64,000 bases of DNA from Pavona decussata (GCA_977016875.1 CDRNST010000436.1:2790001-2854000); one strand, 5' to 3'. Positions 18,501 to 24,500 are shown, numbered from the stretch's first letter. The notes: generated by a model not told the origin, from the letters alone. Numbers and translations: made by a program.

Positions 18501-21500
18501 AAATGTTTGAATGACCTTGCTCATCATAATATATCAACAGTACTTCGCGTTCGTTCAAAAGGTATAACTATAGAGCTATTTAATGTACAACATAATAAAT
18601 AGTACTGAAGGTAATAGACTACTTCGACGATACGGCGGCCATCTTGAATCGCAAGGTATTGTGGGGCGTCCAGGGGGCAACTTACAAAGCTTCATTATAG
18701 TAATGGCGTCGATTAACATACCTCACGCCGATCAAGACGGTTTTACAAAAGATGAATTAAGACGTTGGACAGTTCCTCAGCTAAGCAGATTTCTCAAAGA
18801 TCGTGGAGTGGTTATTTCAGCGGATGGAGGCAGAAAAGAGCAACTTATTGACAAAGTTTACTACGCAAAACAACTCGGTCTCGAAGTCCTTCGAACTGAA
18901 CAACAAATAACCGAAGACATCGTCGCAAGAAGGAAAGAGAAGTTAACTTTTGATGGTGTTTCACTTCCTTTTCCTGAGAACGTTCACAACTGGCTCAAGG
19001 GAAGTGAATATCTTCCAGACACTACGCTTTCTGATTTGGAGAATTATTTTAAAGCTAACGACGGAATGAAAGGTCTAGCGGAAGGCAAAAGTTTATTTGA
19101 GTCTGGTCACGTTTCCGGTGTGGAATACAACGGGATATCAAACGGAGTTAGTTTTTGCTATGTACGGGGGAAGGTTGTTCCTCAAACGAGAATAAATGAA
19201 CCTCCTTACACAGTGTGGGTTTGTTTACGGACTGTATCAGGTGCTGTGATGACAGCCGAATGCAAGTGTTTAGCTGGCTTTGGCGAATGTTGCAAACACG
19301 TGGCTGCATTGTTACATTACATCGAACAGGAAGTAAGGTCTGGAAACAATAAAACTTGTACTTCTAAAGCGCAAAAATGGGGCAAAAAGCCACCTAGTAG
19401 CAAAAAGAAGAAAATACATGAACCTGCTAAAATTAGTGATATCCGGATAAAGAAAGCAAAATTAGATGTTGATGAATTGGAAAACTGGAATTTTCCACGC
19501 TCGAACTTTGACCCTCGACCTATTCCAGACAGGGAGTCATGCTTTGCTCAAAAAGACTGGGAGAATCTTGCAAAAGCATCACATGGAAACTGTGGAATAC
19601 TGGGCTTTATCCCCACAGAATTTGTTCAACAAATGAACGCAAAATTGGGTGAGGAAATTAAAAAATCACCTCCCACGCTCCCTGAGCTTGCTGAGCGAAT
19701 AAGTCAGGAAATGCCATCTGCCTCTTTGAAAGAAAAGTGCAGAAAACTTAAGGAGGATATGACACTATCACTTGAGGAATGCATAGCTGTTAAAGAGGCC
19801 ACTGTAGAGCAATATAAAACCCCATTATGGCAGCAATTTAGAATTGGTAGAATAACTGCCAGCAAATCCCATGATGTTATAGTCAAATATGACGACAATC
19901 TAAACATTAAAAACATGAAAGCGGCTGAAAATCTATGCTCCGAAATATGTGGATACAAAAAGAACATAGATACCAAGCCTATGCAGTGGGGTAGACAAAA
20001 TGAGCCCAAGGCAAGAAATAAATACAGAAAGGATTCAAAGGCACATCATAAAAGTTTTACCTGCAAAGAATCTGGGCTAGTTATTTCTCCCAAACACCCT
20101 TACCTTGCAGCAAGTCCAGATGGTGAAGTTTCTTGCAAATGTCATGGAATGGGCTTATATGAGTGCAAGTGTCCTTGGACACACCGAGACAAAACTATGA
20201 AGGATTACGTTGCACAGAGTGACTCATTTCTTGTACCAGATGTCAGTTTCTTTTCCAACATTGTTCATGATGTAATAGATGGAGTTTTTCAGGCTGTTGG
20301 TTTAAGAGATATATCAACAGCCATGGAAAAAGAAGCATCTAGTACCAAACCATTTAAACTGAAGTGTTCTCACAAATATCATTCTCAAGTGCAACATCTT
20401 ATGTTTGTTTGCGAGAAGGAATACTGTGATTTTCATGTGTACCTTCCAAAAGAGTGTTTTGTACAAAGAATAACACCATGTCACAGTTTCAAAGACAACT
20501 TTCCAAAGCTGGAAAAGTTTTTTGATGACTTTATTGCTCCAGAAATGTTTACAAAGAAACTTCAAGCCAAGGAAATTGTTACAACAATTCTTAAAGGAAT
20601 TGTTGATTCCATTCAGTTGGAGGTGGTTAATTAATTTAGAATGCCACACTGAACCAACTGTCTCTTTAATTAAATGAATGTTACTAGCTGCCAATTGATT
20701 CTTAAAACTTGTTTCTTCCCAGCAAATAATGCCAATTTTATTTTGCAAACTACTAGGCCAAAAAAAAAAAAAGGAAACAGCACCACATACAAGTGCTACT
20801 CAGTATTTTTCATTAAAAGGTAACGCACTGTGACTTCATCCAAACATACAAAATTAAGAACAGCATTAGTGAACCGCCTCCTTGGTAAAAGTTTCTCAGT
20901 ATACATATAACTGCCATAAAAGTAAAGAATTCAACAAAAATTAACAATAGTTTTTCCTATTCCTTGATCAATGGAGGCTGCAGATTTGATATAGCTCCTG
21001 CAATGATCCATATGTCATCAGCCAAGTCAAGAAGGGTTAGTGGCAGTTCATTCTTCAGGAGATCAAATTCCTTGATTCTGCCAATAGCCCTTTCAATGTG
21101 TATGCGAGCCTTTGCAATATCCTTCGAGCGAAAAACTTGCTCTTTAGAAAATTGTGCTGTCTTACCTTTGAAAGGTGGGAAAACCACCCTAACCTGACGA
21201 GAAAGAAAAATATCCTGAACATTAAAACCTCTTTCCACTAAGGCAATCATCCCAGGATGAAATTTGTCTGAAATTTGACATTGTTCTGTAATGTAGCGGT
21301 CTGATGCACATCCACCAAATGACGGTGAAATGTAACTTAAAGAACCTGACTTAGTGCAAACAACAAGCTTTTTAAGGGTGTTGCTACTTTTGTATGTACT
21401 GTATGTTTGGTACTGGGCCTTGGAAAGAGATGGTTTTGAAATTTTTTGTTCTGTACAATCAATAATGCCTTCAACCTTGGTTAGATTTCCAGTAAAATGC

Positions 21501-24500
21501 TTTGAATTGTATGCAAGAGTCTGCTCTGGAGTTGGCCAATAAATCAAGGGTTCCAATTCTCGAGACAAAAATGAAATCATTGTTGTGACAATGTTTGATG
21601 CATGTGGACTGGAAATGCCAAATCTAAAGGCAAGATCGTCAATCTTTAAATCTAGCCTGATTCTCATAAGAGTCATTAGTATTTCATTTTCCAATGAAAG
21701 CTGTCGTTTGGGTCCGGGCTTTGTTTGACAACCTGCCTTTGAGGGGCTATGCTGGTACTTCTTTGATTTATGGGACACCTGACCACGGTAGTAATGAAGT
21801 TTGGCAGAATGGGGTCTAACTTTATCCACAATAAAATAAAAAATTTCACTACTGGGACAACCTGTGTATAATTTCACAAGGGCATCTGAATGTTTGATGT
21901 TTTCAAATTTAAATGTTACCCTTGATTCAAGCTCCTTAATTTTTTCCTTTAAAACTTCATTTTCTTGTTTAACTGCTGCTATCTCATCTTGTTCACTTGA
22001 AACTTGATTAGAGTCTGGCCCAGTCATATGTCCACAATTTTCCAACTCAAAGGGTGATACGCTCTCACTTACATCACAAGTTACTGTAGAGGTCTGTACA
22101 ACCTCATTAGTTTCAAGCCTTAGACGTTTCCGTGTCGAGCATTCAGTGGAAGGCAAAGATACATTCGACCGCTCTGTTGGTAGTTTCCGCTTTATGCGTT
22201 GTTCATCGTATCCTTTCAGATATAATGTTGGGTGAGGATCAACATTCGTTGGCCGGCCGAATTTAAAATGATTTGAGCAAATCCTTGTGTTTCCGTTCAC
22301 ACTGTAATCCACTCTGTTTAAAAGCTTTGTCCAGATCTTGTAGTGATTTTTCTCTCGACATTTCCAGAATCGAAGTTCGTTGCTTCCATCAAAGGTGCTA
22401 ATATGGGGCTTAATGATATATTTTTCCTTATATCGTCTGTCATTGTTACAGCCAAAAACGTTACATCGATCACCTTTACCCATGGTGAGAGGCAAATAAC
22501 ACGTACTCGGAGTTGAAGTTCATCTACGCCGCCATCTTTGTTTTGGCTTTGCCCCCTGGATGCCCCACAATACCTTGCGATTCAAGATGGCCGCCGTATC
22601 GTCGAAGTAGTCTATTACTGCTTTACGCTTTCATCCGTAGACTTAGAACCATCTTGTACAGCATAATGACATTAGAGAAGCGGCAGTAACAAAGTACTCT
22701 ATGCCAAAATAAAGAAAAAAATACGAAACTGCCACTTTCAGTCTTAACCATTTCATTGTGAGTAATACACCAGTGTAATTAGAAATTTATCTTTGAATTT
22801 TAAATATCTTTAAGTGGTGCATTAGAGGATTGTGTGTGGACAACGGTTCACCAAAGATCGACGGAGGTTGGAGCGAGTGGTCTGAGTTGTCGGAGTGTTC
22901 CCTCACATGTGGCGGAGGAGTGCGTTATCGGGAAAGAACCTGTACCAACCCACCGTAAGTAACCACCCTTTAAGGCATGCATGAGAGCGTGCAAGGTCAG
23001 CGAAACAACGACACTCAATTGAGTGTCGTAAAACCAAAACCAAAGTGATAACTCTGGCGTATCACAACAGACGTAAACATCGCAATGAACCAATCAGTAT
23101 TCGAAACAAATATATGTAGCCGGCGTAAAAAGCATGCGAGAAAGACACCATTGCTTTTGCTTCTCATCGGTTGAGAGAGTGACACCAGTTTGGAGTAAAG
23201 TAAAACCAATTAGGTGGGCAGTTTGTGGGACTTAGCGTTGATACTGAAAAATATAAACGACAGAACTCTAAAATTACAGCTAAATTAAAAGTTCTGTATA
23301 CTTGTCGGGTGAAAAAGTGAAGTGTCCGTTGGCGACGATGACCGGAACTTTTTATGCTAAGGAATACACGCCTTGTAAAACAGGCTTCAAATCCTTTTGC
23401 ACGTCGTCAGAAAAGCCTCACTAACCCAATGAGGAGTAAACATTGAAGAGTAAGAATTTGGATCACTGTATCCCTGAGAGGGGAAGGGGGGGGGGGGGAG
23501 GAGGGAGGGAGTACGAGATTTTGAGTACGTTTGGTTGTGAACTATCCGGATCGGAGTGGAAATCCCGAGATTTTACAGAAAAAAATGACCAAAATCTTGT
23601 GAACAAGCTGGAACCTTGTTCAAAAGCTAACCAAAACCACTGTTACAGTCTGTATCCTAATTCAGGCCAATACGGTTTAAATATTGCTCCATTTTGAGAC
23701 AGCACGCATGTACGTACATGGTTCACTAGAGCAAGGGCCCTCCTTATATTTAGGCCTTTTTCCATAATCGAAAATTTAATTCGCCGAGTTATTTGCTTGT
23801 ATCTCATTCTTGCCCTCAGACCGCAAAATGGAGGCAAAACCTGCCTTGGACCCAAAAGATCGTTGTGGGAACTATGTAACAGCAATGTGAGTAAATGTAG
23901 ATTCCTCTTAAGGTTTCGATTTTGCTTAGAATGTACAAGTATTTCCTTACGACGAAAGACATTGACATTGCCTTTCAATATTGTGCAGATTTAACCGATA
24001 GAAATGACTTCTTAAATTACGCGCAGAATTGATTTATGAAACTGTTAAGTTTTAATTATAAGCATTGGTTAAGTATGCGTTTTCAATTTCACAGTGGCAT
24101 TATAGCTCATAAATTATTTTCATGGCTTATTGCATAGGTAAATTTGAGTCCGGTCGACGGCAATACTCTCAAGCTATGAAGGAAGGAATTCAAAGTAGCG
24201 CAAGGACTATTTCCCGGCTTCTGACTGATTATCGTAAGGCTTTTGCTCCTAAAAAACAGAAACCCATTTCCCTTCCGAGGATACTAAAATTTTACTTTCA
24301 ATTATATTAGCTTTAATGACTTCTCCACATCGCAATGGAATTGAACAGCATTGCACAGCAGTTCTCTAACCGTAAAGTGAATTTATTTAATTACTAGCTA
24401 TCTTTAAGTCATTGGTCTTGAGTGTACCAGGTAATGTTCCAAGTTAAAAAAAGAGTCTATCTAGTGCATGTGCTCCACAACTAAGCTGCAAAGCAATCCG

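What the first reader, a model, noticed from the sequence alone, without database searches (positions are those of the whole stretch)
18616..22613. Young, structurally complete two-gene transposon pairing a DDE transposase with a phage-type exonuclease
Seen: near-perfect 65-bp TIRs, an intact TSD and two uninterrupted convergent ORFs, each starting just inside a TIR and sharing a 322-bp tail with opposed poly(A)-like signals (attaaa 20812; tttatt 20737). Known: ISL2EU elements encode a transposase plus a YqaJ exonuclease, and lambda-exonuclease/YqaJ enzymes resect 5' ends for single-strand annealing in phages. To my knowledge the role of this nuclease in eukaryotic transposition is untested. 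Inference: a two-component system in which the exonuclease processes donor-site breaks or transposon ends, for example biasing repair toward homologous restoration of the element. The family is described but the mechanism is open, and this copy is a compact reagent for testing it.
Basis: partly seen in the sequence, partly recalled or inferred. Interest (0 to 1): 0.7.

Follow-up and report, generated by a model that had tools for sequence, protein, structure and literature searches.

The report
Intact coral ISL2EU transposon, one catalytic oddity
This is a recently inserted copy of a known two-gene jumping gene (ISL2EU: a transposase plus a phage-lambda-type DNA exonuclease) in a coral genome; the exonuclease is clearly kept by selection, but this copy's transposase has a change at a catalytic residue, and what the exonuclease does remains untested.

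Summary
At 18616-22613 there is a 3,998-bp element with 65-bp terminal inverted repeats (64/65 identical). It is flanked by an AT duplication inside an A|AT|T target. It carries two intact tail-to-tail ORFs separated by 322 bp.

ORF1 (643 aa) has a SAP-like region, a SWIM finger and a lambda-exonuclease/YqaJ nuclease domain with a complete active site. ORF2 (508 aa) is a THAP, HTH and DDE_Tnp_4 transposase. All of this matches the published definition of ISL2EU, so it is a new member of a known kind. The scan has already reported another ISL2EU on other DNA of this genome.

Three results are new here.
- Against a relative at 81-86% nucleotide identity in the ORFs, from a metagenome contig, the nuclease ORF has dN/dS 0.18 (transposase 0.27). 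It is therefore not decaying neutrally.
- It is the only full copy in the 602-Mb assembly. Contigs of a public run break exactly at 18615 and 22614, as expected if an empty allele coexists with the filled one.
- This copy's transposase has Glu at position 417. All 19 aligned relatives, and 99 of 101 retrieved homologues, have Asp there, and by fold topology this is the second catalytic carboxylate. The copy may therefore be catalytically impaired and is a doubtful ready-made reagent.

The nuclease's role, probably resection of 5'-phosphorylated break ends, is inferred and not shown.

The parts
18614..18615 (.). Left copy of the AT target-site duplication (target A|AT|T; the flank reads gtaAT)
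   Evidence: Sequence. A contig of run X1 ends exactly at 18615. ISL2EU is defined by AT TSDs in A|AT|T (PMC4482050).
18616..18680 (+). Left 65-bp terminal inverted repeat. It starts AGACTAC and contains the core GGCGGCCATCTT.
   Evidence: 64/65 identical to the reverse complement of the right TIR.
18703..20634 (+). ORF1, 643 aa. SAP/HeH-like region (residues ~15-57), SWIM finger (~173-207), disordered lysine-rich linker (215-303), lambda-exonuclease/YqaJ nuclease domain (~305-643).
   Evidence: YqaJ 71.4 bits; SWIM 17-19 bits, just below cut-off. (SAP 17.9 bits and Ish1 20.8 bits, both below cut-off). (lambda exonuclease, E 2e-9). (AF2 pLDDT 77; Foldseek to lambda exonuclease E 5e-9, TM 0.66).
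19840..19842 (+). Arg380, aligned with lambda exonuclease Arg28 (the 5'-phosphate pocket)
   Evidence: Alignment. Nearly invariant in 21 homologues. The role of Arg28 is from my knowledge of the lambda exonuclease-DNA complex (PDB 3SM4, the top fold hit).
20119..20169 (+). PD-(D/E)XK active-site residues Asp473, Glu487 and Lys489, aligned with lambda exonuclease D119, E129 and K131
   Evidence: alignment. E487 and K489 are nearly invariant. Codons checked.
20635..20956 (.). 322-bp tail-to-tail spacer with ATTAAA (20812-20817, + strand), AATAAA on the minus strand (20737-20742) and an A13 run (20758-20772)
   Evidence: It does not align with the spacer of relative L071. Use of the signals was not tested.
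20957..22483 (-). ORF2, 508 aa transposase. THAP (residues 7-74), coiled/disordered linker, HTH_Tnp_4 (261-311), DDE_Tnp_4 (341-500).
   Evidence: DDE_Tnp_4 120 bits, HTH_Tnp_4 46.8 bits, THAP 24.5 bits. (AF2 pLDDT 78, RNase-H-like strand/helix order).
21233..21235 (-). Codon GAA = Glu417, where relatives have Asp in the D(R/K)GF motif directly after strand beta4. The other catalytic positions, D342 (21458-21460) and E464 (21092-21094), are intact.
   Evidence: the only private change of this copy at an otherwise invariant column. D in 99 of 101 homologues; strand 413-416 precedes residue 417.
22549..22613 (-). Right 65-bp terminal inverted repeat
22614..22615 (.). Right copy of the AT target-site duplication (the flank reads ATtac)
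   Evidence: Sequence. A contig of run X1 starts exactly at 22614.

Best explanation
This is a recently inserted, single-copy member of the ISL2EU group (PHIS / PIF-Harbinger-like superfamily) of cut-and-paste DNA transposons, in a coral genome and probably inside an intron. Shown here: 65-bp TIRs; an AT duplication in an A|AT|T target; a THAP-HTH-DDE_Tnp_4 transposase; and a convergent gene for a protein with a SAP-like region, a SWIM finger and a lambda-exonuclease-type nuclease domain. That nuclease domain has its metal-binding and catalytic residues (E434, D473, E487, K489) and the equivalent of the 5'-phosphate-binding arginine (R380) all in place. Both genes have been under purifying selection in the element lineage, and the same tail-to-tail gene pair recurs in at least five diverged ISL2EU families of this genome. 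Inferred: the transposase binds the TIRs through its THAP/HTH domains, excises the element and integrates it with a 2-bp stagger. The lysine-rich linker suggests nuclear import of the ORF1 protein, and its SAP-like region and SWIM finger suggest DNA binding. The nuclease then degrades the 5'-phosphorylated strands at the double-strand ends that excision leaves. This commits the donor break to homology-directed repair from the sister chromatid or homologue, which would restore the element. I give this role about 35-40%. This particular copy carries Glu instead of the conserved Asp at the second catalytic position of the transposase. It is therefore probably impaired or dependent on transposase from other copies in the population (about 60-70%).
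For: Identity: Pfam hits; TIR and TSD; agreement with the published ISL2EU definition of AT TSD in A|AT|T, a THAP/HTH/DDE transposase and a second ORF with a YqaJ domain (PMC4482050; PMC4122938; PMC9179366). Nuclease: lambda exonuclease is the best solved relative by sequence (E 2e-9) and by fold, with D119/E129/K131 and R28 aligned to D473/E487/K489 and R380. Selection: dN/dS is 0.18 for the nuclease and 0.27 for the transposase against L071, at dS about 0.5, Fisher p = 6e-37 and 1e-18, and 0/2,000 neutral simulations keep the ORFs open. Conserved pairing: nuclease and transposase ORFs lie tail to tail in loci L056/L057/L059/L061, L062, L067/L068 and L070, at only 30-36% transposase identity to this copy. 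Clusters of the 80-83% relatives share the same contigs. Youth and polymorphism: this is the one full copy in 602 Mb. X1 contigs end at 18615 and begin at 22614. An X4 contig joins the element's left end to 27 letters that are not this flank. Organism B holds several diverged copies. D417E.
Against: No experiment or raw-read evidence bears on what the nuclease does. No single-strand-annealing partner is encoded. Related Spy elements, and PIF/Harbinger elements (which use a Myb-like partner), move without any nuclease, so the nuclease cannot be essential to the chemistry. The empty allele is inferred from where contigs break, not seen as a bridging read. Element depth in X1 is about 0.75-0.8 of flank depth, not the 0.5 of a simple heterozygote. 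That residue 417 is catalytic rests on fold topology and on my knowledge of the IS4/IS5 D-x-G-(F/Y) motif. The paper's conserved set lists three Asp (equivalent to 342, 395 and 417 here), and the plain text does not show which two are marked. A Glu there might retain some activity.
Confidence: 0.8

Rival explanations
1. The ORF1 protein is mainly a DNA-binding, targeting or nuclear-import partner of the transposase, as the Myb-like protein is for PIF/Harbinger. Its nuclease activity would be secondary or vestigial.
For: The N-terminal half has a SAP-like region, a SWIM finger and a lysine-rich linker. The SWIM segment is the most constrained part of the protein, with dN/dS 0.05. PIF/Harbinger relatives need a second, non-catalytic DNA-binding protein (PMC4122938; PMC2836001 abstract).
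Against: The nuclease domain is also constrained (dN/dS 0.17-0.25). E434, E487, K489 and R380 are nearly invariant across 21 homologues down to 23% identity. The YqaJ domain is the one part of ORF1 present in every diverged family examined.
Confidence: 0.15
2. The nuclease is part of the cleavage chemistry. Like TnsA of Tn7, which is also a PD-(D/E)XK enzyme, it would cut or trim the non-transferred 5' strand at the transposon ends while the DDE enzyme handles the 3' ends.
For: Both enzymes have the PD-(D/E)XK fold, and this is a two-protein system with strict gene linkage. The Tn7 analogy is from my own knowledge.
Against: The closest relatives by sequence and fold are processive 5'-3' exonucleases that need a pre-existing 5'-phosphate end (lambda Exo, LHK-Exo, herpesvirus alkaline nucleases), not restriction-like endonucleases. 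The 5'-phosphate arginine is conserved. Sister groups with the same DDE domain (PIF/Harbinger, Spy) have no nuclease gene.
Confidence: 0.1
3. The nuclease acts on the excised element or at the target rather than at the donor. For example, it might trim 5' ends of the excised transposon or of the 2-nt gaps at the new site, so affecting integration efficiency or TSD repair.
For: Same biochemical inference: a 5'-3' exonuclease working on 5'-phosphate ends. ISL2EU has an unusually short 2-bp stagger.
Against: There is no specific evidence. Extensive 5' resection of the excised element would destroy its TIRs.
Confidence: 0.1
4. The locus is an inert relic. This copy is already dead through D417E, and its intactness only reflects its youth.
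For: D417E is the sole private change at an invariant column. This is the only full copy in the assembly, and older relatives on C144, C64, C202 and C119 are riddled with stops.
Against: This concerns only this copy's autonomy, not what the element is. The family is alive in the species: there is a different flank in X4, several copies in organism B, and both ORFs are under selection. It is compatible with the best explanation.
Confidence: 0.5

Closest known systems
ISL2EU group of the PHIS (PIF/Harbinger-ISL2EU-Spy) superfamily of eukaryotic DNA transposons (Repbase; Han et al. 2014, PMC4122938; Han et al. 2015, PMC4482050)
   Same: AT TSD within A|AT|T, a THAP + HTH + DDE_Tnp_4 transposase, a second ORF with a YqaJ exonuclease domain, TIR length within the 6-259 bp range, about 4 kb in size, animal host.
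   Different: The TIR starts AG rather than the usual GG (relative L071 starts GG). The element is 3,998 bp against a mean of ~4,840 bp. This copy has Glu at the second catalytic position. It is single-copy in its assembly.
Bacteriophage lambda exonuclease (Red alpha) and YqaJ/LHK-Exo alkaline exonucleases
   Same: Best solved relatives by sequence and fold. The active-site residues D, E and K and the 5'-phosphate Arg are conserved.
   Different: The nuclease is fused to a ~300-residue eukaryotic N-terminal region (SAP-like, SWIM, basic linker). It has a ~28-residue, clade-specific, helix-forming insertion after the ExK motif (residues ~515-545). No annealing-protein partner is encoded. The trimeric ring is not testable here.
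PIF/Harbinger elements (transposase + Myb-like DNA-binding protein)
   Same: Homologous DDE_Tnp_4 catalytic domain, and a two-gene design in which the second protein carries DNA-binding modules.
   Different: The second gene is a nuclease, not a Myb/SANT protein. The TSD is 2 bp AT rather than 3 bp TWA. The transposase carries a THAP domain.
Tn7 TnsA/TnsB
   Same: A DDE transposase paired with a PD-(D/E)XK nuclease.
   Different: TnsA is a restriction-like endonuclease that cuts 5' ends, whereas this nuclease is of the lambda-exonuclease type. The two are not homologous beyond the fold class. The analogy is from my own knowledge and was not tested.

Membership tests
ISL2EU (PHIS superfamily) | Transposase with the IS5/PIF-type DDE domain and the conserved set D-K-D-D-P-R-E | tested here: met
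   DDE_Tnp_4 at 120 bits over the full profile. D342, K365, D395, P436, R460 and E464 sit at the published spacings. The fourth position is E417 instead of D, so homology is met with a deviation at a catalytic residue.
ISL2EU (PHIS superfamily) | THAP and HTH DNA-binding domains N-terminal to the DDE domain | tested here: met
   THAP 24.5 bits (cut-off 23.9) and HTH_Tnp_4 46.8 bits.
ISL2EU (PHIS superfamily) | [quoted passage not shown] | tested here: met
   YqaJ 71.4 bits. Lambda exonuclease is the best PDB hit by sequence and fold.
ISL2EU (PHIS superfamily) | 2-bp AT target-site duplication in an A|AT|T target | tested here: met
   The flanks read gtaAT|element|ATtac. X1 contigs break at 18615 and 22614. 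Two related ends also follow aAT (L002 and L071). No bridging empty-site sequence was seen directly.
ISL2EU (PHIS superfamily) | TIRs of 6-259 bp, usually beginning GG | tested here: inconclusive
   A 65-bp TIR meets the length criterion, but it begins AG. The 81-86% relative L071 begins GG. 'Usually' allows exceptions.
Lambda exonuclease / YqaJ PD-(D/E)XK exonucleases | Conserved active site (Asp, Glu-x-Lys, upstream Glu) on the lambda-Exo fold | tested here: met
   D473, E487, K489 and E434 align with lambda D119, E129 and K131 and the upstream Glu of the WGKQYE motif. Foldseek E 5e-9, TM 0.66 normalised to the target.
Lambda exonuclease / YqaJ PD-(D/E)XK exonucleases | 5'-phosphate-dependent, processive 5'-3' exonuclease activity; ring-shaped trimer | not testable with these tools
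   Only the Arg28 equivalent (R380) can be shown. Activity and oligomeric state need biochemistry.
Active (autonomous) DDE transposon copy | Intact catalytic triad Asp-Asp-Glu | tested here: not met
   The copy has D342, E417 and E464. Residue 417 follows strand beta4 in the AF2 model and is Asp in 19/19 aligned relatives and 99/101 retrieved homologues.

The most novel reading that the evidence does not exclude
ISL2EU elements encode their own break-end resection enzyme, a lambda-Exo-type nuclease tethered to chromatin by SAP/SWIM modules. It would steer the host's repair of the excision gap toward homologous restoration, turning a cut-and-paste transposon into an effectively replicative one. 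A sister family in this genome fuses an OTU deubiquitinase domain to the same nuclease, which would fit manipulation of ubiquitin-controlled repair-pathway choice.
Probability: 0.3. Interest if true: 0.65.

Novelty: new member of a known kind. Interest (0 to 1): 0.33.

Why it matters
ISL2EU is the only group of eukaryotic cut-and-paste transposons known to carry a phage-type recombination exonuclease as a rule, and nobody has tested why. It is therefore a working part of the element and not baggage. If it biases repair of the excision break, it would be a transposon-encoded way of controlling host repair-pathway choice, and possibly a useful tool. The practical message for anyone choosing a copy to test is a caution. 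This attractive-looking copy has a substitution at a catalytic residue of its transposase, so it should be tested next to an Asp-bearing relative.

Tried and rejected
DNA of the 80-84% relatives P0012, P0013 and P0133 could therefore not be fetched, and only one related DNA copy (L071) was available for dN/dS.
Full-length copies of the other ISL2EU families of this genome, with their TIRs and TSDs, could not be collected. The architecture was read from the 3-4.5 kb loci already held.
- Searches for a haplotig or paralogous empty site with the two flanks found only the locus itself.
- dN/dS among copies of other families in this genome is uninformative, because the copies differ by only 1-25 substitutions.
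- A possible in-frame 51-nt intron at about 20243-20293 (GT...AG) was considered and rejected. The segment is conserved as a helix-forming peptide in relatives, is modelled as a helix, and the X4 contig is colinear across it.
- No solved structure is related to the transposase by sequence. The fold search gives only generic RNase-H-like integrases and transposases, so residue 417 could not be mapped onto an experimental active site.
- The papers did not say in plain text which of the three conserved Asp are the triad.
- The large representative protein search was not used, because the family scans left nothing open.
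Full report
**What is in the sequence**

The two arms reported by the repeat finder are 18611-18680 and 22549-22618, 70 nt and 99% complementary. Read base by base, they resolve into three parts:
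- 65-bp terminal inverted repeats at 18616-18680 and 22549-22613, with one mismatch at TIR position 52;
- an AT on each side (18614-18615 and 22614-22615);
- a palindromic outer context, gtaAT ... ATtac.

The only direct repeat at the ends is AT, preceded by A and followed by T.

ORF1 runs from ATG 18703 to the stop at 20632-20634 and encodes 643 aa. ORF2 runs on the minus strand from ATG 22483 to the stop at 20957-20959 and encodes 508 aa. The ORFs start 23 and 66 nt inside the TIRs and are separated by 322 bp.

**What the two proteins are**

ORF2 matches three Pfam families above their cut-offs: DDE_Tnp_4 over the whole profile (120 bits), HTH_Tnp_4 (46.8 bits) and THAP (24.5 bits).

ORF1 matches YqaJ (71.4 bits) and the viral alkaline exonuclease family. 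Several further results define it.
- A SWIM finger scores just below cut-off (19.1 bits against 19.6).
- An N-terminal helix-extension-helix region gives sub-threshold SAP and Ish1 hits.
- Lambda exonuclease is the best solved relative by sequence (E 2e-9). Lambda D119, E129 and K131 align with D473, E487 and K489, and Arg28 aligns with R380. From my knowledge of the lambda exonuclease-DNA complex, Arg28 is the 5'-phosphate pocket.
- An AlphaFold model built on 21 homologues has mean pLDDT 77, with the nuclease domain above 90. It shows a disordered lysine-rich linker at 215-303.
- Foldseek places the model on lambda exonuclease (E 5e-9, TM 0.66 per target). LHK-Exo and the herpesvirus alkaline nucleases follow.
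- Across homologues down to 23% identity, W376, R380, E434, E487 and K489 are nearly invariant.

**Comparison with the known family**

Three papers describe ISL2EU in the same terms (PMC4482050; PMC4122938; PMC9179366):
- AT duplications within an A|AT|T target;
- a transposase with DDE, HTH and THAP domains;
- a second ORF with a YqaJ exonuclease domain;
- TIRs of 6-259 bp that usually begin GG;
- autonomous elements of about 4.8 kb;
- animals only.

Every defining feature tested here is met, except that the TIR begins AG. The nearest relative begins GG. Run labels and an earlier report of this scan point to a coral host. That earlier report had already described another intact ISL2EU on a different piece of this genome, and reached the same classification and the same open question. 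This is therefore a new member of a known kind.

**Copies and relatives**

The 602-Mb assembly holds one full copy. Beyond it there is only a 236-bp left-end fragment at 94% identity (C90), scraps at 74-92%, and short sites that share the TIR core.

Protein searches of the same genome find many diverged ISL2EU families. In the loci I could read, the nuclease ORF and the transposase ORF lie tail to tail in at least five families (L056/L057/L059/L061; L058; L062; L067/L068; L070). These have only 30-36% transposase identity to this copy, and each nuclease ORF matches YqaJ. The closest relatives in this genome (C144, C64, C202, C119; 47-51% transposase identity over most of the protein for the first three, fragmentary on C119) are broken by stops in both genes.

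Outside this genome, there are proteins at 83% (nuclease) and 80-84% (transposase) identity. Members of the two protein clusters sit on the same contigs.

One related element could be fetched as DNA: L071, a 7.2-kb metagenome contig. It is 86% identical in the nuclease ORF and 81% in the transposase ORF. It has a related TIR, and its spacer does not align with this one. Nei-Gojobori estimates are as follows.

| ORF | dS | dN | dN/dS |
|---|---|---|---|
| Nuclease | 0.48 | 0.088 | 0.18 |
| Transposase (aligned part) | 0.55 | 0.145 | 0.27 |

Every segment of the nuclease protein lies between 0.05 (SWIM) and 0.25 (nuclease core). The excess of synonymous change is highly significant (p = 6e-37 and 1e-18). 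None of 2,000 neutral simulations kept either ORF open. The nuclease gene is therefore not decaying neutrally. It is at least as constrained as the transposase gene.

**Age and polymorphism**

The TIRs differ at 1 of 65 positions and the duplication is intact. In public run X1 (same organism, a different individual by its fixed differences), the left-flank contig ends exactly at 18615 and the right-flank contig starts exactly at 22614.

In a k-mer graph, the inverted repeat alone would break the contigs about 25 nt inside the element. A break exactly at the edges of the duplication is what a coexisting empty allele with a single AT produces. This is inference: no bridging piece was listed, and element depth is about 0.75-0.8 of flank depth rather than 0.5.

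Three further observations come from the same call.
- In run X4, a contig joins the element's left end, preceded by AAT, to 27 letters that are not this flank. That suggests another insertion site in that sample.
- X4 contigs are colinear with the DNA across both ORFs, with 0-2 differences. X4's depth on the element exceeds its depth on the flanks, so it may be RNA, but its kind is only a guess.
- Organism B holds several diverged copies with indels.

**An overlooked flaw in this copy**

In an alignment with 19 relatives, the transposase's only private change at an otherwise invariant column is D417E. The codon is GAA, read as ttc on the plus strand at 21233-21235. Its 81% relative has Asp there.

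Among 101 retrieved homologues in which the motif could be located, 99 have Asp. In the AlphaFold model (pLDDT 78), the order of elements is:
- strand 337-348, carrying D342;
- two further strands;
- helix 395-407;
- strand 413-416;
- residue 417;
- a short helix and a strand;
- helix 447-470, carrying E464.

This is the RNase-H-like topology, in which the second catalytic Asp follows the fourth strand. The motif D-(R/K)-G-F, together with R460-x3-E464-x6-K471, matches the N3 and C1 signatures of IS4/IS5 transposases as I know them.

The published conserved set D-K-D-D-P-R-E fits D342, K365, D395, [E]417, P436, R460 and E464 at the stated spacings. The text does not show which two Asp are marked, so a small doubt remains. 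I judge that this copy's transposase is probably impaired. It is not proven dead.

**How it most likely works**

Shown: the anatomy; the homologies; the complete nuclease active site and 5'-phosphate arginine; selection on both genes; and their fixed linkage across families.

Inferred: excision by a DDE enzyme leaves double-strand ends with 5' phosphates. A lambda-Exo-type enzyme, brought to DNA by its SAP-like and SWIM modules and to the nucleus by its basic linker, would resect those 5' strands. Resection commits a break to homology-directed repair. Using the sister chromatid or homologue as template, that repair would put the element back at the donor site, so each jump adds a copy. I give this about 35-40%.

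The rivals are:
- a mainly architectural partner, like the Harbinger Myb-like protein (about 15%);
- a TnsA-like role in cutting the 5' strand (about 10%). This is disfavoured because the nearest relatives are exonucleases that need an existing end, and because sister groups with the same DDE domain have no nuclease;
- action on the excised element or the target gaps (about 10%).

No paper in the searchable library tests any of these.

**Limits**

- Only contigs, not raw reads, could be laid.
- Use of the poly(A) signals, transcript overlap in the spacer, the empty allele and the state of base 21233 in other individuals remain open.

Noticed in passing
L049:433-3273 (+) = G000:C123, and the related copy on C27 (L046/L062): Another ISL2EU family in this genome has a 947-aa ORF1 in which an OTU-like cysteine protease (deubiquitinase) domain (Pfam OTU, E 1.6e-10) precedes the SAP-like, SWIM and YqaJ part. 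On C27 the same ORF lies tail to tail with a transposase ORF. An OTU-nuclease fusion in a transposon may be worth a finding of its own.
   Followed up: partly
window 18649-18680 and 22549-22580, compared with L071:2487-2522 and L071:7181-7216: The inner ~32-nt module of the TIR (TCGCAAGG...GGGGGCA) has the opposite orientation relative to the outer module in the 81-86% relative L071, at both ends of that element. The outer module and the GGCGGCCATC core keep their orientation.
   Followed up: partly
G000 C172:853320, C273:1725890, C93:1316080, C25 (four sites), C26 (two sites); loci L016, L023, L026, L028-L030: Short sites share 85-93% identity with TIR positions ~19-65, including the core GGCGGCCATCTT, but not the outermost 18 nt. 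They may be ends of related or non-autonomous elements, or a shared protein-binding or promoter motif.
   Followed up: no
window 17567-17884 and 22621-22667: There is a 105-bp unit repeated three times at 17567-17884. A ~50-nt piece of the same unit recurs just right of the element. This explains the many short 'joints' from 18501 to about 22643 in all four runs. They come from other copies of this repeat, not from excision.
   Followed up: partly
window 22872-23200: A very high-copy repeat: summed contig depth is above 100,000 in X1 against about 100 for unique flank.
   Followed up: no
window 11066-11425 (+): This ORF looks like a reprolysin/ADAMTS propeptide exon.
   Followed up: no
window 20243-20330 (ORF1 residues ~515-545): A ~28-residue helix-forming insertion sits between the ExK motif and the QVQ motif of the nuclease. 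It is present only in this element's clade (window, P0001, P0163, P0002, P0003) and absent from other ISL2EU nucleases and from lambda exonuclease.
   Followed up: partly
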